From Camelus ferus (Eukaryota): a stretch of DNA of 64,000 bases. Position 1 is the stretch's first letter; every line of letters begins with the position of its first letter. The position numbers and the translations under genes were made by a program. Shown here piece after piece: positions 1,809-63,380 of the stretch. Location of the stretch: NCBI RefSeq assembly GCF_009834535.1, contig NC_045705.1, positions 65,410,001-65,474,000 on the forward strand, written 5' to 3'. Under the pieces are notes generated by a model. It searched no databases, had not been told where the DNA came from, and was given only the letters and a program-made list of their open reading frames with translations.

Positions 1809-3957
1809 CACAGCTGCCTCAGAGCTTATTAGAAAAGAACACTGAAATTCATTAGCAATGTCTGCTGTGCCATGATTGATTAATGCTGTCTGTCATGAGC
1901 AGGGTATTGAGAGTAATACTCTCCTGCTATGCCCAGAAATGGGCACGAAAACAGTTTGGACTTTAGAGTCAGACTTGACTCTGACATCTGGCACTCCACT
2001 CATCAGATCTGTCACCTGGAACCTCAGTGTCCTCCTATGTGCACTGTGGATGACAAAGAAATCATACCTATTTACAGAGTTGTTTTGAAGATGGAAAAGA
2101 ATGCGATGTGAAGAGAGCTCTTTGCATATTGTGAAGTACTATCTGGGTAGAATCCATTCCCATCCCTGAGATTTGTGGGTACACAGGATTGATGCAGCCT
2201 CATAATTTAAGTCTGGGTGGGTGGGATTGGGTATGACAGCTGGGCCTGGCTCTCTTTGCTTGTGAGGTGCCTGGGAGCAGAGGCTGAAGCGAGGCATCCC
2301 ATGCAGTGAGGCTGTCCTGATTTCTCTGAAATATTTTTGTTTCCCAGAAACCAGGAGGGCTGGGAATTCTTGCCTGAGGCAGGCACCTGAGGGGCTCATT
2401 AAACCAAGAGCTCCTCAGGGAAGAATCCAGGGGAGTCACCGCACATGATGTAACTGTGAAAAGACATCTGGATAGGAAAGTCTAGGGCCCAAGTATCCCC
2501 ACCCCAGCCCCCAGCCCCAGATCTTGACTCCAGTCTTCCCTTCTCTAGACCCTGGCATCAGGGTCTAGAGACCCTGTGAAGGCAAGACAGTCAGCAAGTG
2601 TGCCTATTGCCCCTCTCAGAAGGCCACAGCCCATGAGGAAGATCAAAGAAGGCAGCATTTATGGCTTGATCTCCCTGAGGAGTGGCAGGGAGGAAGGGAC
2701 ACAGAGTGGGTAATATTTAACCATGAATGGCTGTGCAAGGCTGGCAGGACAGGGTTCAGGACCATCCAGTACAACTTCTCACTTAGAATGTGAGGAACTA
2801 ATGACCAGAGAGGCAAGGTCACCTGGGGGAAGGGAGCGGAGCTGGAGGGAGGACACACCTGTCTCCTCCAGCCCTCAGTCTTTCTCCACACCCAGCATGG
2901 AAGAGCCTGGTGCATGCCTCAGTGTATGAAGGCTTGGAGGCCTCCCAAGCTACAGTGAGAGCTCCTGGGCAGCAGGATCGTTGGCTGTCTCACTCTCTGA
3001 AGCATCCCCAGTGCCTCAAACACTGTCTCCCTGTAACAGGTGCTCAATTAATAAATACATGAGTGAAAGTCAAGCAGGCAGCTTGCCATCTGGGAAGCCC
3101 AAAAGCTTCCTGGATGACTTTAAAAAAACTCCCGCTTTACTCTTTCCCACAGGACCTTCTCTGGGTTCCTGGGGGACTCTCCCTAACCAACCTCCTCATT
3201 TTACCAGTGGGGAAACTGAGGCACAGGGAGGGGATGGTCACACAGCTGGTTTGGGAGAAGCCAGGATACATTGATACCCTGTCCCAATTTCTTCCCACAC
3301 TTTCTGGGGTTGAAGAGATGTCGGGAGTCTCCAGCTACCCAGGCATAAGAAGCCCTCTTTCTAGGTCCCCCACCATGTGCAACCCTCATTTGAGGCCTGG
3401 CCTCCACAGGGTACCTCGAAGAAGTTTCAGATGATGGGTAGCAGAGAAAGAGTCCAGGTGGCTGCTGGTAGGGCTGAGGCTGGCTATCGACTTCCCATTC
3501 GCAGTTGTGGATGGGTCTTCTGGAAACTAAGCCTCAGCTGGGAGGGTTCACAGCCTAATGATGTGTAGGACGCATTGACTGGCAGGGCAAGGGAGGAGGG
3601 TGACAGCCTGCTTCTGTGAGGGCATCTGTGGTGGGCAGGGGGCATCTCCTGTTAGGGAGATCAGAGAAGGCTTTCCAGAGAAAGAGCTCTTTGGGGAGGA
3701 CATTGAAGAATGGGGAGGCTCAATCCCAGGGCCTAGAACTTGATCTTGAGCAAGTCATTTAACTAACCTCTTTATGCCTCCCTGTGAAATGGGGGTGATA
3801 ACGTAAGTATTTAATGATGTAACATAGTAAAGGGATTAGAATAGTACCCGGCACACAGTAAGTCACATAAACATCTGTTAAACTTTTAAACAAGTGCATT
3901 TGATAAATAACTGATGAATTTTTTGTTCATATAACAGCAGGCTTATATTCTGTTTTA

Positions 3958-45010: not shown

Positions 45011-45140
45011 AAATTAATGAAGTTATTTGGGGGGGCGGTAATTAAGTTTACTTATTTATTTTTTACCAGAGGTGCTGGGGATTGAACCCAGGACCTGGTG
45101 CGTGCTAAGCATGCACTCTACCACTGAGCTATAGCCTCCT
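45011..45140 (-). mobile_element. tRNA-Ala-derived SINE, long-tail type
   Basis: ggggattgaacccaggacc...ctctaccactgagctatagcctcc. Confidence 0.87.
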
Positions 45141-48921: not shown

Positions 48922-48949
48922 TGTGTGTGTGTGTGTGTGTGTGTGTGTG
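48922..48949 (+). repeat. (TG)n microsatellite
   Basis: Visible TG run. Confidence 0.9.
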
Positions 48950-49798
48950 AGTGAATTTCTCATATCCCCTTTAAACTGGCTCTGTCATCCCCTTCATTAG
49001 GGAGTTTAAAAAAAAGTCTAAAGCATGCTGCATGTCTAGTTATATGGGAATTATTTCTTAAGTTTTTGAATATTCTACCTATACATTCTCTGTGTATGTG
49101 TATGTCTCTGTCTCTGTCTTGTTACATCAGGAATCATGGGATGCCTAGAAAGGCTCCCCAGGGCTGGACAGGGTCTGAGGGCAACAAGGCTGATGGGCAC
49201 AAGTCCTGAGAGCCTATTGGTGGCCAGGGCACAGTGACTACAGCTGGACACTTGGGACTACGAGCGGGGTTGGGGGAGGCTCTGTGGCCTAGGACAGGGA
49301 AAACCCCACTGGTGAAGGGGGGCAGGTCTCAAGGGAGGCCCTAGGAGGCCGTCGCTGGAGGTGGGGGTGGGAATTAAAATTCCAGATGCATCTTCAGGCC
49401 TGAAGCATGTTGAGTGTTGGGCTCCAGGGGAGCTCTCACTACCCACCCCACGACTTGACTGACAAAGGGGAAGACTCATCCAAGTTCACAAGGTGGGAAG
49501 TGGCTCTTCTGGCCCCTCCCTAGTCTTCTGCCCTTTGGAGTTAGACCCGATGCTTCCATCCTCCCCAGGGGAGGGTGTGGCCCCCTTCCAGTCCCACCCC
49601 AGCACTTATCACAGAGACATTGATCTTGAGGCTGATAACCAGCCAGACCAGGAATCTCCTCTGGGGTGGGGGAAGCTCAGGGCCAGCAAACCAAGGAAGG
49701 TAGGGCGATGTCAGAGGATGGCCTAGGGACCAAGCTGCTCCACCCGAGTCCCAGGGCCCACAGACAGGCAGGGGAGCCATGGCTCAGCTGCAGAGACG

Positions 49799-49804
49799 TT
49801 TACT
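49799..49804 (-). terminator. Candidate variant poly(A) signal AGTAAA for the unnamed gene
   Basis: TTTACT on plus, 118 nt past the TAG at 49922. Confidence 0.4.
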
Positions 49805-49921
49805 GCTGGGACCTAGAGCATAGCTTCTAGGATGGAATGGCTTCCTGAGGAGGCCGCCTGTCTCCAGCCTCGGGCCCAGCCAGGGCTGCCACTGGTTTCC
49901 ATGGTTGTGGGGAGCGTCAGG

Positions 49922-51818
49922 CTACAGGATGGCCAGCTCATCCTTCTGGGAACTGGGCGGCTGCAGGCAAGGGGAGCTGAGTCAGTGGCTGGGCATGCTG
50001 TCCTCTCGCCCCACGCACCCGAGAGGAGGTCTGTGTACCTGGAACAGTGCCCCCTCTTGGAAGGCCTGGGCTCCCTCCTGGGTGTCCTTCCCTTCCTCCT
50101 GGATGGCCCTCTCTCCATCTAGGATGGCCTTTGCTTCCTCCTTCAGGCTCTTGTACAAAGAGTTAGGCTGGAACAAAGGGTTGCAGGGGCCAGAGGTGAG
50201 TAGCCAACCCCAGGCAGGACTGCCAGCGCAGGAGCTGGTCCAGGAGACAGGGAGGAGGCACAGTGAAGAAGAGGGTCCTAGACTGAGGCTCTCACCAGGT
50301 CTTGCAGCTTCTCCCCCAGGGCCAGGTTGTCTGCTTGGATGGTACTCAGGGACTCCCGAAGCCTAGAGTTGAAAAAGAGACCCTCTGCTCAGCCCCCAGG
50401 AGCTTGTCTTAGGCAGCCCTCACCCCCACCCCCAACACACAGCTCTTGCATGAGCTACAGGATCTGGCACCAGCCAGGAGCCCAGTGTTTCACCAAGAGC
50501 TCAGGCTGGCTCTGGGGAAGCCACAGGCAGGGAGGGAATTGATCTCCCCACGTGACCCACAGCAAGGGACCGCACAGAGCCGAACTGTGCTTTTCTTCTT
50601 CTTTAGCCAGAGAAGAGCAGGTGACTTCATCGCATATGCTTAGATAGGAATCCTCTAAGGCAGCCTATAGGGCTGGCCACCCCACCCCTCTGGGCTGCAG
50701 TGGGGGCTGTGACAGGTTCTGGGTGGTTTCCGTGTGGAACTGTGTGGAACTAGCCCTGCCGGAGTGGCTGAGCCAGCTGTGGATGAATGAAAGTGCCAAC
50801 CACACAGATCCATGGCCATGGGAGCCATGTGCAGCCTTGGGGGAATGACGTCACACACCCCCATCCCAAGACCTCTGTCACCAGGTGGAGATCTGACCCT
50901 AGTATTGCCTCAGACAGGCAAGCGGCCATGGGATTGTGCAGACCTAATGTCCAGAGTCTGACATGCAGAGAACAGACCCTCCCTGCCACTTCCCCACAGA
51001 CCAAACTACCCCTCAGGTTCTTGGACAATTAAAGATGGGGTCCCTTCTAGGCAGCCTATAGACGGCCCACTATCCAGGCAGGTGGGCGCACTGATGGGAA
51101 AGAGCTGTGGCCTCCACTCCTGCTCACATACAAGGACACCAATGCTGGGGAGGGAAGGGACTGATTGGCCAGCAAGGATGTCATCCAGAGTAGAACAGAC
51201 AGAAGGCAAGGGAAGGAGGGGAAGACCAAGGCTGAGTGAAGGTGCAAACCCATAGCTGTCAAGCCCCAGTCCCTGACCTCCACAGGGCAAAGCCCTGTCA
51301 CCCTACCTGTCCTCATTCCCCCTCCTACCTGTCCCCACCTGCCCCTTCCCAGCTCACCTCTGGCAAATATTCTGCAAATGGCTCATTTCCTTCGAGGTCC
51401 GCTGGGGGCCCCAGTCTTCCTTATCCAGGAACCGGCACGCCTGGCTCTCCAAGTCCCTGGGGTAGGTGGGCAATGAGGGTTGGACCAGAGTCTAGAGACT
51501 AGGGCAGGGTTAGGGTGGGCAGAATGGGGATCCAGCCCGAGGTTGAGGCTTCCTCAGTCCTATCTTAGCCATGCCCCTGCACACCCCAGGGCTGAGTCCT
51601 AGCCCAGGTCTGAATGGTGATGGTCGGGGAGAAGCACCCTGTGCCCCGCTCCTCTTCACACCCTCACACACGTGCACACCGCCTTACTCTTCAGGGTCTT
51701 TGGTGGGCTCTGCTGTGCTCAGGAGTGTAAACAGGAACGTGACGGTGGCTTCCTCTTGGAGGCCCAGCTTTTGCTCTGAAGAATCTGAAGAAAGTGGCTT
51801 TGGCAGAGAGGGTGTCAT
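49922..51818 (-). CDS. Unnamed 154-aa leucine-zipper/coiled-coil protein; complement join(51688-51818,51358-51456,50296-50362,50039-50167,49922-49960)
   Basis: Four GT-AG introns with pyrimidine tracts and compatible phases (2,2,0,0). Translation: MTPSLPKPLSSDSSEQKLGLQEEATVTFLFTLLSTAEPTKDPEEDLESQACRFLDKEDWGPQRTSKEMSHLQNICQRLRESLSTIQADNLALGEKLQDLPNSLYKSLKEEAKAILDGERAIQEEGKDTQEGAQAFQEGALFQPPSSQKDELAIL*. Start codon is the least certain part. Confidence 0.75.
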
Positions 51819-52295
51819 GGTGACTGAAGGGGCATGAGGCTGGCTGCCCAGGAGCTGGGTCCTCCCACACCCAATAGCAAGATGGTGGGGTGCAATGGCT
51901 GGGGGTTCAGATCTCCATCCAGGCAGGAGAAGAATTTCTCCAGCCCTCCTGCCATCCTGGCCCTCTGCCTTGGGAGGTCCTGGGGCTTCCTGTCACCTCT
52001 GTGCCTGGCTCCCTAGAGACCTGAGGGTCTTCTGGCTTCTGCTTCTCAACAGGCTGCCGCACGGGCTTCTCCTCAGGCTTGGAGTGGGCCCTTCGTCCTC
52101 CCCTGGGAGACTGAGGGAGATAGAAAGTTGGTTGATGAGCCACATCCCCCGTCCCATTGGCCTCCCCTTTCTAGCCTCTGGTTTTCCTGGGGCAGCCTCC
52201 AGCCTCGAGAATCTCCACCACCAGCTCTGTGCAGTAAACCAGCCCTTTGAACCTGGGCTGCCACCCATCTCCCCAGTGCCTGGGGGGCTTAAAGT

Positions 52296-52488
52296 TAGGG
52301 CTATCAGATTTAGCAAACAAAATATAGGACACCCAGAGAAATTCGAATTTCAGATAAACAGTGAATCACTTTTTAGCAAAAGTCGATCCCAGACATTGCA
52401 CAGGATAGACTTATACTTTAAAAAGTATTTGTTTTTCATCTGAAATTCAAATTTCACTGAGTATCCTGTATTTTACTTGGCAACCCGA
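52296..52488 (+). mobile_element. MER53 palindromic MITE
   Basis: tagggctatcagatttagcaaa...ctgaaattcaaatttcactgagtatcctgtattttacttggcaaccc matches recalled MER53; long internal inverted repeat. Confidence 0.85.
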
Positions 52489-54804: not shown

Positions 54805-54958
54805 TTTTTTAATTGCTTTTTTTGTTTGTTTGTTTGTGAGGGGGGGAGGTAATTATGTTTATTTATTTATTTTTTTTAGAGGAGGTACTGGGGATTGAAC
54901 CCAGGACCCTGTGCAAGCTAGGCATGCGCTCTACCACTTGAGCTATATCCTCCCCGCT
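54805..54958 (-). mobile_element. tRNA-Ala-derived SINE, long-tail type
   Basis: Perfect 17-bp TSD aaatttgtcctattatt at 54788-54804 and 54959-54975. Confidence 0.92.
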
Positions 54959-57807: not shown

Positions 57808-59465
57808 CAGGTTTTCTTTTTTAATTTAAAAAAGAAACCTGTTTTCTCTTAAACTCCATTCTTACTTTTTCAGGGACAGAGAGAAGTCTGTGATAACGAA
57901 ATCAATCCAACATCATTTGGTGACTTCCAATTCTACAGGACTGTTTCCCAGGAGTTGTCCTGCCAGCTGGTGAGGACCAGATTCTTCAGGTGTGGGCCAG
58001 CCCAAAGGCATCTGGGCCCACCCTGGTAAAGGGGCTTGCTTGCAGGATTTGACAAAGCATGAAGCGTTCGACAGGTAGCCTGGGACCCTTTAGCCTTGCA
58101 AAGAGTTTAATTAGCGCCATCAGGCCCAAGCATTTCAGGTGCCCTAACCGAGGAAGCGCTTATCTTCCCTGACGTTCTCTGCTGTTCACCAGCCCCTCTA
58201 CACTCCTCTTAGCCTCCACGTCCACGAACCTGTAAATGTCAAAAGGCACAATGGCCTGGGCTCTGGCGGAAGTTGTGGCTGGGAAGCCTTTGAAGGCTCA
58301 CTTTTTAACAACGTTGAGGAACAAGAAGCAGAGGGTAGGGGAGCAGGGTTCCCCAGAGAACGACCACCCTTCTGCCCCATTCAACTCTGAGCACCTACCT
58401 CAGGGCAACGTCCTCGTGTGAGAGGACACTAAGGAAGCTGAAAGCTAAAACTGCTATTAACCTCAGCCCCTTTCTGGCATGCGAGAAAAGCTTCTTAGAA
58501 CTTTACAAGTGTAGCTGCAAAATGCTAGATCACCATCAAGACCATCCAACCCCTGTTATTCTTCTATAGCTGAGTAGACTCTGTACACTTTATTTTGTTA
58601 AAAAAACAGCTATGAGTGACAGGAGTGTACCCCTTCCCGGCCCCCTGCGGGCCTCCAGTCCCAGTGCCCTGAGCCTCAGGTTCAGTGGCATCTGGAGACA
58701 CCTTCTTTGCCCCAAGCAGCCAGTGCCCCATCAGCCTGGCATTTAACCGAACATCTCAACAGCAGAACAGACTATAAAACACAGCTTCTCTGCAGTAAAT
58801 GTTTACGTTTGAAACCCAGCCAAGGCTTCCCTCTATCCTTCAAAACCTAAGACCCTATAGACTGAATGTCCAGCTTCTCCCACAGATAGACTGTTTGCAA
58901 TCCATGGGGACATGTCCTCCTAGACCAGCCACAGAATCTATGAGGAAACCCAAGCCTTGTTACCTTGAGGGGCTCACGACCGGGAACAGAAGGCAACTCA
59001 GAAGAGAAAGGGCAAGGCTGGCTGTGGCCCTCAGCATCCGTTTCTGGTGGAGCTGGTGCAGAGCAGCCACGTTTCCCAACAAGGGCAGAGGTGCTCTCTC
59101 ACCCACAACCCCCCGCCCTTTAACCTCCTCGGGCTGGGCCAGTGATTCTGACTCCCTAGTCTGTGGCCCAGCTGGAAACCAACTGGGATACTCTGGGAGG
59201 CAGGGAGGAGAGGGTAGTGGGTCACCGACTACAGAAAGGACACCAGTGCGTGGCTGGGCCAGGCAGGCCGGGCCCCCTTTCCTGAAGCTGAGACGGCTGT
59301 GGCTGCCACACAAGCCCTGGGAGGAGGACAGGCCTCCTGTGCAGCAACAGCACGGTGGTGGGTAACAAGGCCAGGGGAGGGGACCCTGAGAGTCTTCTCC
59401 ACAGGTAGAGGGGACTATGTACAGGGGGAGGAGAAGAGTCTGGCCAGGTGCATCCCCATCTCATC

Positions 59466-62400
59466 TCATTCAACCAGGAGATCAAACTGCTCAGCAGCTT
59501 CAAACTCAGCATTCATGGCTGCGGCCCACTCATCCAGCTCCGATTTCTGGGGGAAGAGAAATGGGGGGCAGGTGAGTGGGGAAGGGGGCATGTTGTCTGG
59601 AATGTCTCCACCCATGGTCTGCAGGCACTGCCTTTCCCTCATAACAGCCAGAGCTGAGCCCCGGCCCTGTGAGTGTCTGGTGTGTCTGGCATGTCAGCAG
59701 AGGAAGGCCCTGCCCCTCACTCACCAAGATCTCAGGCACCTTCTTCTTCTTTCGCTTCTCTTTCATAACCGGCGGGGAGATTCCAGGAAGAGTCATGTCT
59801 GGGGCCCAGGGCTTCGCAGGGACCCTGGGGACCTCGGTTAACTTTGAACACACCACCGGCGAGACTCCAGCCAAGTCTTCTGCCGCCAGCAGCCCCTCAA
59901 AGCCAAAGCAGGACCGGCGGCCAGGGGTGGAGGTGGAGACAGAGCCAAGAGTCTCCAGGCGGCTATAGGATCGCCTGACTTTCTTCGACATTTCCAAGTC
60001 TCTGGCGTCCAGGTCTCCTTCTCTGGAGTTGGACTCAACATTAATGGAGCAGAGCACAGGAGTGGGGGTGGGGGTGACAGGGACGCTGCATGTCTGGAAG
60101 AGGTCTTCCCTTGCAGGCTTCTTGCTGGAAGGGTTGTTTTCTTTCTCCAAGAGAAAAGCAATCTGTACCAAGATGGAAGAGAGAATGCCTCCCTGTTACC
60201 TAGCTGTGCTACTCTCAGAAAGGCCCAAGGAAATGTAGTGTAGAAAGACAGACCCACAGGACACTTTTAAAAGGGAAAGTGGAGACAAGTTAGGCACTGA
60301 GACAGATGTGGGGAGGGGAAGAGAACAGTCAGTCATGGCTTCTGAGTCCACTGTTGTGACACAAGAAGACTGGCCACCATCCCCGACACTATCAGGTCTG
60401 TCCCCAAAATGTGACTGGACCCTAACCATCCGTCCCTGGAGCAAGCCCCCATCACCTGTCCTCTAGACCCTTTCAATACCCTCCTCCCTGCCCCTTCCTG
60501 CTCAGGTCCATTTGCCACACAGCTGGAGATGATTTTCCTAAAATCTCCATCCAGTCAGTAAGTACATATGGGTCACCTGCCAGGCCCTGTCCTGGGCACT
60601 GGGAGTACAGCAAGGAAAAAAACAGAGAGAACCCCTGTCTTCGTGGAGTTTCCACTCTAGCAGGGAAAAGAGGCAATAGAAATCATGTTGTCCGCTAGAT
60701 ATGCTAAGTTCTCTTTTGGAGAAAAACAGAGCCTAGAGCATACTTGGGGGTGGTTTGGAATTTTAAGCAGGTATAGATCAATGTAGGCCCCACTGAGGTA
60801 GCATCTGAGCTATGACTTGAAGGAGGTGAGGGAATAAGTCATCTGGAGAAGAAATGTTCTAGGCAGAGCAAACAGAAGGTACAAAGGTCCTGAGGTGCAA
60901 CTATGACAGTCACTGTCAAGGAACAGGAAGGCCAGTGTGGCTAAAGTGAGAAGAGGAACTGAAGGTGGTTTGGGAAGTAATGGGCGTGTTCTAAGGCATT
61001 TTGGTAGGCCACTGTAAGGGGAGACCCTTGCTCTAAGACCCAGGGAGCCATGGCAAGGTTGTGAACAGGAAAGTGCTTAATCTGACATGCGTATTAAGAG
61101 GTCCATGTACTGGCTCCTCTTAAGTCTAATCTCAGTTCAAATACTATTTCCTCAGGGAGGCCATCCCTCACCTTGGAGTAGAGACCAGCCCCCCTTCACC
61201 TCTGCTTGTTACCCTCCGTCACAATGACCTCTTTCCTGGACAGCAACCATCACTACCTGATTTTGGCTGCTCACTGGTTGACTGTCACCCTAATCAGATC
61301 GTGCGCTTCATCTGTCTGGTTCTCGCCTACGCCCAGCACCTTCAGCAGGGCCCTGCAAGGAGCAGGTATTCAACAGATACTCACCGGATTAACTTACACA
61401 AAACTTGGCACTGAGCTTTCTGACAGCCAAGACAAGGTGAGAAGCAGGATAAATTCAGTGACCTCTATTGTGGTCTAATAGGGTTGTATTGGTTATTAAG
61501 AGAGACATCTCCTGGCTACAGGCTCTGAGAAATCTGCCGTATTAGTCTTAACCTAGTAAAAGGGATGCTGAACAAAAGTAATTGGGTGTCACCCAACTAA
61601 TTCTTCCCCTACAGCCAAGCACGCAGCTTTTTGGCTTATTATTTCATCAAACAATCATTCAGCCAAGAAAGAGTGGCCACCACTTTCTTGAGGCAGAAGT
61701 CCCTGTCCTCAAGAAAACAAACATGCAAACAAAATACTCTCTGCTATTCATCAAGCCTGTGGAGAACTATATCCGGAATGCTTCTAGAAGGTGTTCTTTG
61801 AGCTGAGTCCTGTGTGATGGGGTGAGGAGCAGCACTCTGCCTTTACCTTACTCCGGGCTCCCACCATCTCACTTCAGGATTCCTTTCAAGTCCTCGTACC
61901 TGGTTTTGGGGTCCCCAAGAGGCTTTCTCCAACACATCCTCCACCCAGACCCAGGAGGGATCTTTCTAAAACACCCAAGCTTGCCTCAGTCACTACCTTG
62001 CTTAAGGCTCTCCAAAGCTGCCCACAGAACCATGGATGAAGTCCAAACTCCTAAGCATGGCTTTCATGCCTCATCAGGATCTGGTCTGGCTCAGCACACT
62101 CCCTTGCCCTGACAATGTCTGCTGCAGACACACCAAACAAGCTGCTGTTCCCAAACCTTGGGCTTTTCCTTGTGGAATCTGCAAACACAGACTGCCTTTA
62201 AAGATTCAGTTTAAATACTTCTTCTGTGAAACATTCCCTGAGCCATCTGGTCTGGGTTAGGTGCCTCCACGGCATCTAGTAGTCTCCTTATTACAGTTCT
62301 CAGCACACTAGGTTGTTATCACTTATTCGTCTTTCTCCTCATTTGACTGTAAGCCCCATGAGCTCTTCAAAGGCATTCATTATATCTTTTCTTTCGTTAT

Positions 62401-63380
62401 AGCTTCAGGCACAGATCTTGTCAATGAAACATCCTTAATAACTTCTGCTAACAGTTAAGAACACTGCAATTCCATAAGTAAAAACTAAAATAATAGACCA
62501 GAAAGAAGAAAGAGTAATTAAGACACAGCTCAACTTTTAAAGAAAAACAGCAGGGAATACTAGGACATCAATAGCTAAATGTACTAAATCTGCAGGAAGC
62601 AAGCAAGACAGGCAGTACATGCAGGTGTCCAAAGGCAAATTGTTTCAAAATACAACAAAAACAGCTCCCTGGGTAGATGTAAGTAGCCATTATGTCCCGC
62701 CCCAGCTCTAGAGTGCCCTGGATTCCCATCAACTAAGCAGATGAAAATGAACTTACCCTGGGGCTCCTTCGAGGCGACTGAACAGATGGGGTCTGCGGAG
62801 ACAACACCAATTAAACACAGAGCCGGCCACCAATTTTGGCTCCCTACCTACAACCCCTCTCTCAGCCCTCACCTCTACAGTATGTGCCACGATCTTCTTC
62901 AAGACAATGGGCTTTCTGATTGGAGCCTCCTGGGGTGCCTGGAGAAAAGGGGTGAACATGAGCTCTACATTAGTCCAGGGACCCCACGGGCAGGAGGAAC
63001 TGAAGAACGCAGGGCTCACCTTAGGCCAGATTTCCGGGAGGGTGCTTGGGAGATCAGAGCCTGATTTCCGCTGGGACCTCCGCAGAGACTGAGTGGGAGT
63101 TGGGGCCTTGGGCTCTGGAAGGAGAAAAATTTACGAGGTAGGGGAGCACTCTGGACCTCAGAGTCTAGAGAACAGGTTCTGGAGAGAGCGAGAGAAGGTC
63201 CCTAACAGGCCCTTTGGGGGAGCCTTCCCAGTGGAGGGGACAAGCCTCCTAGTGTAGTGGGGGGAGGGCCTTCCTCACGGGACAGCGTCCCTCAAACGGT
63301 TCAACCCCATCCCTCCCGCGCGCCCTCTGCTCACCGGAGCACTGGGCGGCCCCTCCGGACCGCGTTCGCCTCTCGGACAT
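59466..63380 (-). CDS. CDCA5: Sororin, 253 aa; complement join(63335-63380,63020-63114,62873-62938,62757-62792,59725-60162,59466-59546)
   Basis: MSERRTRSGGAAQCS..., KEN box (LEKENN), FGF motif (CFGFEG), C-terminal ELDEWAAAMNAEFEAAEQFDLLVE*; 762 nt, all GT-AG. Confidence 0.97.

What the first reader, a model, noticed from the sequence alone, without database searches (positions are those of the whole stretch)
49922..51818. Hidden intact 5-exon gene encoding a 154-aa leucine-zipper protein between NAALADL1 and CDCA5
Seen: five minus-strand segments bounded by good splice signals (donors GA|gtaagg, AG|gtgagc, TG|gtgaga, AG|gtacac; acceptors cctaccccag, ttttcaactctag, ctttgttccag, ccttgcctgcag). 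Introns are 231, 995, 128 and 78 nt, and phases 2,2,0,0 join into one 465-nt ORF. The ATG has A at -3 (accATG), 5 nt after an acceptor (ccttcag), and an AGTAAA follows the stop. Residues 68-99 form a clean heptad, M-SH-L-QNI/C-QR-L-RES/L-ST-I-QAD/N-LA-L-GEK/L-QD-L, with Leu/Ile at d and an Asn at a, as in dimeric zippers. Known: I recall no named protein-coding gene in this interval in human. Inference: a real but poorly characterised gene, possibly testis-type and possibly lost in some lineages. It may already exist as an uncharacterised LOC model; I cannot check.
Basis: partly seen in the sequence, partly recalled or inferred. Interest (0 to 1): 0.85.

Follow-up and report, generated by a model that had tools for sequence, protein, structure and literature searches.

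The report
Annotated coiled-coil exons downstream of sororin
The five segments are real, expressed and conserved coding exons, but public databases already list them as an unstudied camel gene (mouse Gm550) and as an alternative tail of the cohesion protein sororin, and the proposed start codon lies in an intron.

Summary
The five minus-strand segments join through GT-AG introns of 231, 995, 128 and 78 nt into a 465-nt ORF with a clean heptad repeat.

Two RNA-derived contigs match the window at 99-100% (one mismatch in each of two short blocks) and use all four proposed junctions. They also carry one more upstream coding exon (52110-51997).

The locus is not hidden.
- The identical 154-aa model is GenBank EQB77745.1 (Camelus ferus).
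- RefSeq has LOC102508993 (234 aa).
- "Sororin isoform X2" of C. bactrianus (412 aa) maps residue for residue onto this window as CDCA5 exons 1-5 plus these exons.
- Orthologues occur in all four eutherian superorders, including mouse Gm550 and human predicted sororin isoforms X2, X3 and X5.

Exon lengths and splice sites are conserved. The core has omega 0.29 (p about 2e-12).

In this genome the stand-alone start codon used in pig, cattle, whale, seal and bat reads ACG.

No Pfam, PDB or fold relative was found, and no functional paper.

The scan's earlier notes hold nothing on this locus.

Verdict: a real gene part, already annotated, function unknown, and mis-modelled at its 5' end.

The parts
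51997..52110 (-). It runs from an internal acceptor (ctccctcag|TCTCCC) to the donor ACAGAG|gtgaca and encodes 38 codons (SPRGGRRAHS...REPGTE).
   Evidence: First block of RNA contigs L001 and L002, 100% identical to the window. Residues 228-265 of P0065 map here exactly. Acceptor and donor are conserved in all 8 other mammals examined. Omega is 0.94, so it behaves as a linker whose frame, not sequence, is kept.
52111..52420 (-). DNA upstream of the internal acceptor, also transcribed. It holds the orthologous position of the stand-alone start codon (52152-52150), which reads ACG here, and an in-frame TAG at 52173-52171.
   Evidence: RNA runs X3 and X9 hold 100% and X2 holds 72% of the sampled words. 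The alignment of this stretch shows ATG in pig, cattle, whale, seal and bat but ACG in this genome. ATG census of the extended transcript.
51798..51996 (-). Intron 0 (199 nt).
   Evidence: Spliced out in L001 and L002. The ATG codon reads AGG, ACA or ACG in cattle, whale, zebra, seal, sloth and naked mole-rat.
51688..51797 (-). Coding exon E1 (110 nt). The true acceptor is ctctgccaaag|CCACTT. It encodes the TVTFLFTLLSTAEP motif.
51358..51456 (-). It encodes the FLDKEDWGPQRTSKEM motif and the start of the zipper.
   Evidence: It is 99 nt in the eight species with an intact copy (101 nt in the broken naked mole-rat copy) and belongs to the core with omega 0.29.
50296..50362 (-). It encodes the zipper heptads, including the invariant Asn at an a position.
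50039..50167 (-). It continues the helix and carries 7-residue repeats whose number varies between species (108, 129 or 150 nt).
   Evidence: This exon was the query that found the family.
48927..49960 (-). Last exon. The CDS is 49960-49922, with stop TAG at 49924-49922, followed by at least 995 nt of 3' UTR.
   Evidence: L001 runs to 48927 and ends at a (CA)n run. The stop codon is CAG in most other mammals (CTG in sloth, CCA in naked mole-rat), where about 15-45 more codons follow.
59725..63380 (-). CDCA5 (sororin) coding exons 1-5: 63380-63336, 63115-63020, 62938-62873, 62792-62757 and 60162-59725. In the RefSeq model of sororin isoform X2, the exon 5 donor joins in frame to the acceptor at 52110.
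   Evidence: P0065 (XP_074227881.1, 412 aa) maps exactly onto the window with GT after each block.
58964..59095 (-). Segment inside the CDCA5 3' UTR (the CDCA5 stop is TGA at 59468-59466) with donor CTCAAG|gtaaca. The RefSeq model LOC102508993 uses it as 5' coding exon and splices it to 52110.
   Evidence: tblastn of P0044 against the window. Sequence read.

Best explanation
The five segments are genuine coding exons of an already annotated, eutherian-wide but functionally unstudied locus just downstream of CDCA5. Its public names include camel LOC102508993, hypothetical protein CB1_000429080 and mouse Gm550.

Shown:
- A further upstream coding exon (52110-51997) splices to an acceptor at 51797, so the real reading frame enters from upstream and the proposed ATG is intronic.
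- The core, from TVTFLFTLL through FLDKEDWGPQRT and the zipper, is under purifying selection.

Inferred:
- The product is an acidic protein (pI about 4.5) whose core is one long helix with 4-5 leucine-zipper heptads and a conserved Asn at an a position. It most likely works as a parallel dimerising coiled coil, that is an adaptor or oligomerisation module. It is not a DNA-binding bZIP.
- In this genome the stand-alone start codon is lost (ACG). The frame is therefore most plausibly translated when the internal acceptor at 52110 receives an upstream exon. RefSeq models this in two ways: CDCA5 exon 5 joined to 52110 (sororin isoform X2, 412 aa) or a CDCA5 3' UTR exon joined to 52110 (LOC102508993, 234 aa).
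- The sororin fusion keeps the sororin segments that in the literature carry the KEN box and the FGF motif (from my own knowledge, not tested here). It replaces the last exon, which encodes the Sororin C-terminal domain, with the coiled coil.
For: Sequence and RNA:
- the ORF and splice sites are as described.
- contigs L001 and L002 (two RNA runs of, as far as can be told, one study) match the window at 99-100% (one mismatch in each of two short blocks) in six blocks, giving introns 51996-51798, 51687-51457, 51357-50363, 50295-50168 and 50038-49961.
- fourteen RNA runs hold 16-40% of the words of the locus.

Existing annotation:
P0044 (XP_032346412.1) uses the 52110 acceptor.
- sororin isoform X2 of C. 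bactrianus maps residue for residue onto the window. Vicugna, human, other primates, carnivores, bats, tree shrew, pika, beaver and anteater have equivalent fusion models. Mouse Gm550 is NP_001349356.1.

Conservation:
- exon lengths (114; 110 or 107; 99; 67; 108-150; 39 nt) and GT-AG sites are conserved from camel to sloth.
- omega is 0.49 overall (p 1e-9 against 1) and 0.29 in the core (p 2e-12).
- Leu, Asn, Phe and Gly positions are invariant.

Structure and translation:
- the AF2 model has a helix over residues 76-156, with mean pLDDT above 90 across residues 81-130.
- there is no in-frame ATG in the extended exon 0 of this genome.
- a mouse proteomics paper (PMC12977177) lists Gm550 among detected proteins.
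Against: - The fusion therefore rests on RefSeq predictions plus two contigs that both break exactly at that acceptor.
- DNA upstream of the acceptor is also present in RNA, so a stand-alone transcript exists as well.
- Exon E0, the would-be linker, evolves neutrally (omega 0.94).
- In this genome both the stand-alone ATG and the ancestral C-terminal tail are lost. That would also fit early decay.
- Dimerisation and any cohesin-related role are untested. No homologue of known function exists.
Confidence: 0.8

Rival explanations
1. It is an independent small gene, the Gm550/LOC orthologue, with its own promoter upstream of exon E0. The CDCA5 joins are read-through by-products. In this genome the product would start at a non-AUG codon or at the first in-frame Met (KEM|SHLQ), which gives an 87-aa protein that is essentially the zipper. 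Alternatively it would start at the RefSeq ATG in the CDCA5 3' UTR exon.
For: - Many species carry stand-alone LOC models, and mouse has an NP_ record.
- An in-frame ATG lies 33 nt upstream of the acceptor in pig, cattle, whale, seal and bat.
- RNA covers 52111-52420 in three runs.
Against: - That ATG reads ACG in this genome, and four out-of-frame ATGs precede the first in-frame Met.
- Start positions differ between lineages: mouse starts inside E0, zebra at a second Met, and the sloth ATG is out of frame.
- The internal acceptor is conserved in all nine species.
- Both RNA contigs break at that acceptor.
Confidence: 0.4
2. One reading: a 154-aa protein translated from ATG 51818 on a five-exon mRNA.
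For: - The ORF is intact, and the same model was deposited as EQB77745.1.
- The ATG has A at -3.
- The RNA runs hold somewhat more of the locus than the spliced exons alone would give, so some intron retention is likely.
Against: - Both RNA contigs splice the ATG out.
- The ATG is not conserved: it reads AGG, ACA or ACG in six of eight other species.
- A transcript that retains intron 0 carries upstream ATGs, including a 46-aa upstream ORF that ends on the ATG.
Confidence: 0.07
3. In this lineage the unit is a transcribed relic on its way to becoming a pseudogene. It has lost its start codon and its C-terminal tail, and the remaining open frame is inherited rather than maintained.
For: - ATG has become ACG, and CAG has become TAG.
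- The naked mole-rat copy shows that the locus can decay.
- The camel-specific changes are 8 nonsynonymous against 4 synonymous.
Against: - There is no frameshift, no internal stop and no lost splice site in six exons, and splicing is correct in RNA.
- The C-terminal tail is cut at different points in pig, cattle, whale and seal, so it is dispensable rather than diagnostic.
- The 8:4 ratio resembles that of other lineages that keep the gene.
- The frame remains usable through the CDCA5 joins.
Confidence: 0.12

Closest known systems
Camelus ferus hypothetical protein CB1_000429080 (EQB77745.1, 154 aa) and LOC102508993 (XP_032346412.1, 234 aa)
   Same: XP_032346412.1 shares everything from the 52110 acceptor to the stop.
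   Different: EQB77745.1 starts at the intronic ATG. XP_032346412.1 starts in an exon that lies in the CDCA5 3' UTR. Neither record carries any functional information.
Sororin (CDCA5) predicted long isoforms: X2 of Camelus bactrianus (XP_074227881.1, 412 aa), X1 and X2 of Vicugna pacos, X2, X3 and X5 of Homo sapiens, and equivalents in other primates, carnivores, bats and other mammals
   Same: The whole 412-aa protein maps exactly onto this window.
   Different: These are computational RefSeq (XP_) models. I found no paper on them. Canonical sororin (253 aa in camels) ends with the Sororin C-terminal domain instead, and the coiled-coil module has no sequence relation to sororin.
Mouse Gm550 (LOC225852, NP_001349356.1, UniProt A0A494BBN4, 184 aa)
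   Same: It is the orthologue by sequence (E 2.7e-38 against the family profile). It shares the TVTFLFTLL motif, the acidic ...DDWGPRRTS... motif and the zipper with its Asn.
   Different: It starts at a Met inside E0 and has a divergent, repeat-rich C-terminus. It is listed only in a proteomics table (PMC12977177), and its function is unknown.
bZIP-type and other dimeric leucine zippers (GCN4-like)
   Same: It has 4-5 heptads with Leu/Ile at a and d and a single buried Asn at an a position. In the literature that Asn specifies parallel dimers (my own knowledge).
   Different: There is no basic region: the sequence before the zipper is acidic. There is no Pfam bZIP hit, and the whole protein has pI 4.5. 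It may work like a zipper but is not a member of the bZIP family.

Membership tests
Eutherian Gm550 / LOC102508993 family (coiled-coil unit downstream of CDCA5) | Significant sequence similarity over the core (hydrophobic motif, acidic DWGP motif, zipper) | tested here: met
   Exon 4 alone finds members at E 9e-12. The camel protein against pig gives 2.5e-69, and the profile against mouse Gm550 gives 2.7e-38. Invariant columns are listed.
Eutherian Gm550 / LOC102508993 family (coiled-coil unit downstream of CDCA5) | Same exon-intron structure and splice phases | tested here: met
   Exon lengths of 114; 110 or 107; 99; 67; 108-150; and 39 nt, with GT-AG sites, hold in seven other intact species.
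Eutherian Gm550 / LOC102508993 family (coiled-coil unit downstream of CDCA5) | Conserved position next to CDCA5 | tested here: met
   In the window the unit lies between CDCA5 (59.5-63.4 kb) and NAALADL1 (about 42.8 kb and lower), as shown. In the horseshoe-bat locus a sororin gene lies directly upstream. Fusion models exist in many species.
Sororin (CDCA5) alternative isoform | An in-frame splice from a CDCA5 coding exon into this unit is possible in this genome | tested here: met
   The exon 5 donor at 59725 and the acceptor at 52110 are both phase 0. The 412-aa RefSeq protein maps exactly onto the window.
Sororin (CDCA5) alternative isoform | RNA reads across the CDCA5-to-52110 junction in this species | not testable with these tools
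The indirect evidence is that both RNA contigs begin exactly at the acceptor and that the genomic upstream sequence is also present in RNA.
Sororin (CDCA5) alternative isoform | Sequence homology of the unit itself to sororin domains (Sororin_middle, Sororin_C) | tested here: not met
   Pfam finds no sororin domain in P0044 or in the exon pieces. PF09666 appears only in the fusion models, through their CDCA5 part.
bZIP transcription factors | A basic DNA-binding region directly N-terminal to the zipper | tested here: not met
   The preceding sequence is acidic (EDLESQACRFLDKEDWGPQRTSKEM), the protein has pI 4.48, and there is no bZIP Pfam hit at E up to 10.
Dimeric leucine-zipper coiled coil (structural class) | A heptad repeat with hydrophobic a and d positions on a continuous helix | tested here: met
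   The best register gives a = L,N,L,L and d = L,I,L,L over residues 76-105. The AF2 helix has mean pLDDT above 90 across residues 81-130. These Leu and Asn positions are invariant across 14 mammals.
Dimeric leucine-zipper coiled coil (structural class) | Actual dimer formation | not testable with these tools
   Only monomer prediction is offered. No multimer model or experiment was possible.

The most novel reading that the evidence does not exclude
The coiled-coil unit is a functional, eutherian-specific alternative C-terminus of sororin. The resulting long CDCA5 isoform would keep the N-terminal and middle parts of sororin, lose the C-terminal Sororin domain, and gain an acidic dimerising helix. 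In camelids the stand-alone start codon has been lost, so this fusion would be the main or only way the unit is translated. This would be a so far unstudied form of a core cohesion regulator.
Probability: 0.25. Interest if true: 0.55.

Novelty: already known. Interest (0 to 1): 0.27.

Why it matters
As a discovery it adds little. The exact protein, several RefSeq models and orthologues across placental mammals are already in public databases.

What remains of interest is a gap in knowledge rather than a new object. A coding unit conserved in all four eutherian superorders, with a core under clear purifying selection, has no known function and no Pfam family. Annotation pipelines repeatedly join it in frame to sororin, an essential cohesion factor.

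If the long sororin isoform is real at the protein level, it would matter to the cohesin field.

The case also shows that a well-argued ab initio model can be right in its internal exons and wrong in its first exon and start codon.

Tried and rejected
No junction-read counts are therefore available. I used RNA contigs from the look-up of encoding contigs instead.
- The spliced 154-aa protein has no reference, so I did not type it into any tool. The family was reached through exon 4 given by reference.
- Pfam on the exon pieces and on full-length relatives gave only sub-threshold generic coiled-coil hits.
- A PDB profile search found only designed coiled coils, at E above 0.02.
- Foldseek against Swiss-Prot models gave nothing with E below 1.
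- Rfam found only two tRNA-like hits, elsewhere in the intergenic region.
- Searches of the held paper library for the LOC symbols, for sororin or CDCA5 isoform phrases, and for NAALADL1 with CDCA5 all returned nothing. Most 'Gm550' hits are glucose meters, mouse cages or a DOI.
- The baboon and macaque isoform proteins are not on record as gene products, so the codon analysis includes no primate.
- The rough splice-site weight matrices were built from memory. I used them only descriptively and did not build a chance model on them, because RNA and orthologue evidence made that unnecessary.
- I rejected a bZIP reading because there is no basic region.
Full report
**1. The observation**

- Exons: 51818-51688, 51456-51358, 50362-50296, 50167-50039 and 49960-49922.
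- All four introns are GT-AG, with lengths of 231, 995, 128 and 78 nt.
- The joined ORF is 465 nt and encodes 154 aa.
- The heptad register is real. The best 28-residue window has Leu, Asn, Leu, Leu at a and Leu, Ile, Leu, Leu at d. The protein is acidic, with pI 4.48.
- AGTAAA lies 117 nt after the stop. There is no CpG island upstream.

**2. Context**

CDCA5 (sororin) exons lie on the same strand at about 59.5-63.4 kb. The first exons of NAALADL1 lie at about 41.9-42.8 kb. The candidate therefore sits in a gap of about 16 kb, downstream of CDCA5 and upstream of NAALADL1.

**3. RNA evidence**

Fourteen RNA runs hold 16-40% of the sampled words of 49700-52100. Several of them are labelled as reproductive-system samples.

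I could therefore not count junction reads.

The protein search led instead to P0013, a 169-aa product called on two assembled RNA contigs, L001 and L002, from two RNA runs of, as far as can be told, one study. Aligned to the window they match at 99-100% (one mismatch in each of two short blocks) in six blocks:
- 52110/52111-51997
- 51797-51688
- 51456-51358
- 50362-50296
- 50167-50039
- 49960-48927

- There is an additional upstream coding exon, E0, with donor ACAGAG|gtgaca.
- E0 joins an acceptor (ctctgccaaag|CCACTT) at 51797, which is 21 nt downstream of the proposed ATG. That ATG lies inside a 199-nt intron.
- The last exon continues at least 995 nt past the stop, well beyond AGTAAA. It ends at a (CA)n run where the assembly stops. 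No AATAAA or ATTAAA occurs within 1.6 kb of the stop.

**4. It is already annotated**

phmmer with exon 4 alone, given by reference, found mammalian relatives. Further searches and cluster look-ups gave the following.
- P0044 (XP_032346412.1, LOC102508993, 234 aa) has the same body. It enters through the 52110 acceptor from an exon that maps to 59095-58964, inside the CDCA5 3' UTR.
Alpaca has the same kind of model.

The window is thus from a camelid. Relatives elsewhere carry two kinds of name.
- 'Uncharacterized protein LOC...' in pig, cattle, red deer, buffalo, zebra, elephant seal, ferret, several bats, pangolins, lemur, bonobo, rabbit, guinea pig, squirrel, mole-rats, elephant and sloth.
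- 'Sororin isoform X...' in human (X2, X3, X5), baboon, macaques, green monkey, orangutan, mouse lemur, cats, hyena, dingo, sea lion, bats, tree shrew, pika, beaver, pocket gopher and anteater.

The mouse orthologue is Gm550 (LOC225852, NP_001349356.1). All four eutherian superorders are represented. No marsupial or other vertebrate appeared, although this search does not prove absence.

**5. Evolutionary constraint**

I fetched the orthologous loci of pig, cattle, gray whale, zebra, elephant seal, horseshoe bat, two-toed sloth and naked mole-rat. I then mapped the camel exons onto them.
- Exon lengths are 114 (102 in seal); 110 or 107; 99; 67; 108, 129 or 150; and 39 nt.
- All length differences are multiples of three. 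Those in exon 4 are multiples of 21 nt, that is whole heptads.
- The GT and AG dinucleotides, including the internal acceptor of E0, are conserved from camel to sloth.
- The naked mole-rat copy has lost a donor and an acceptor and is out of frame, so it is a pseudogene there.
- The horseshoe bat has lost the acceptor AG of the last exon, which is 38 nt long there.

A codon model on eight species gives these values of omega, each tested against omega = 1.

| Region | omega | p |
|---|---|---|
| All codons | 0.49 | 1e-9 |
| E0 | 0.94 | not significant |
| E1 | 0.64 | 0.05 |
| Core: E2, E3 and the start of E4 | 0.29 | 2e-12 |

Pairwise dN/dS values range from 0.22 to 0.82. The core is therefore a protein under purifying selection. 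E0 is a linker whose frame and length, but not sequence, are kept.

**6. Start and stop in this genome**

Pig, cattle, gray whale, elephant seal and horseshoe bat have an in-frame ATG 33 nt upstream of the internal acceptor (M-V-x-x-A/P-H...). Their stand-alone LOC models start there. In this genome that codon reads ACG, and an in-frame TAG lies seven codons further upstream.

RNA runs do hold the 310 nt upstream of the acceptor: 100% of words in two runs and 72% in a third. So a form of the transcript that is continuous with the genome exists as well. This also explains why both assembled contigs break exactly at the acceptor, since that is a branch point between two upstream contexts. In the continuous form, four out-of-frame ATGs precede the first in-frame Met. 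That Met is the one at the start of the zipper and would give an 87-aa product.

It reads AGG, ACA or ACG in the other six species.

The stop codon TAG is CAG in most species (CTG in sloth, CCA in naked mole-rat), where the frame continues for about 15-45 codons. Elephant seal has the same TAG, and pig, cattle and whale stop at other nearby points. The tail is therefore weakly constrained. Camel-specific changes, 8 nonsynonymous against 4 synonymous, do not stand out from other lineages.

**7. What the product looks like**

An AlphaFold2 model built on 14 orthologues gives one long helix over residues 76-156 of P0013. Its mean pLDDT is above 90 across residues 81-130. Two short, less confident helices precede it, and both ends are disordered.

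No relative of known function was found.
- There is no Pfam family, only sub-threshold generic coiled-coil matches.
- No PDB relative was found by profile.
- No Swiss-Prot fold match has E below 1.

There is no basic region before the zipper, so this is not a bZIP.

**8. Interpretation**

The following is shown.
- These are real, spliced and constrained coding exons.
- They are already annotated.

The following is inferred.
- The conserved core acts as a dimerising coiled coil. The conserved buried Asn favours a parallel dimer, which I state from my own knowledge of zipper rules.
- In camelids the frame is most plausibly read when an upstream exon with an ATG is spliced onto 52110.

The in-frame join from CDCA5 exon 5 would give a sororin that keeps its N-terminal and middle parts and replaces the exon encoding the Sororin C-terminal domain with this helix. 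I could not verify that junction in RNA here. I also found no paper on such an isoform or on any LOC symbol. The only literature trace is Gm550 in a list of proteins quantified in a mouse microglial cell line (PMC12977177).

**9. Verdict**

The unit is real, poorly characterised, already a LOC model and lost in at least one lineage. It is not hidden, not five exons, does not start at that ATG and is not clearly independent of CDCA5.
- Novelty: already known as an annotation, with function unknown.
- Interest is modest. The one reading that would raise it is that the long sororin isoform is a real protein.

Noticed in passing
window 51798-51996 (minus strand): Intron 0 is as conserved as the exons. 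Its identity to camel is 0.80-0.90 in six laurasiatherians, against 0.64-0.81 for introns 1 and 3. Its 3' two-thirds is open in the downstream exon's frame. This could reflect an alternative coding or regulatory role.
   Followed up: partly
L007 (elephant seal), last coding exon; window 49922-49924: Elephant seal carries TAG at the same codon as the camel, where most other species have CAG. This looks like an independent truncation of the same C-terminal tail.
   Followed up: partly
L010 (naked mole-rat) 3040-3403: The naked mole-rat copy is annotated as a hypothetical protein (GW7_20646), but it has lost the E1 donor and the E2 acceptor and is frame-shifted. It is probably a pseudogene.
   Followed up: partly
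window 50039-50167 and the orthologous exon 4 in L003-L009: The length of exon 4 varies by whole 21-nt units (108, 129 or 150 nt, and longer in seal and sloth). These are seven-residue repeats of the type QEEGKAx / QEGAQAx, so the helix changes length by heptads.
   Followed up: partly
window 45068-45138 and 54880-54952 (minus strand): Two tRNA-like Rfam hits at about 34 bits lie in the intergenic DNA. They are probably tRNA-derived SINE heads rather than tRNA genes.
   Followed up: no
window 52314-52373 / 52420-52479: A 60-nt inverted repeat, 75% complementary with a 46-nt spacer, lies in AT-rich DNA just upstream of exon E0. Its nature is unknown.
   Followed up: no
window 58962-58964 (minus strand), inside the CDCA5 3' UTR: A good donor (CTCAAG|gtaaca) lies about 500 nt after the CDCA5 stop codon. 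The RefSeq model LOC102508993 uses it. If it is used on full CDCA5 transcripts, it would create a 3' UTR intron.
   Followed up: partly
It would act as an upstream ORF in any transcript that retains the intron.
   Followed up: no
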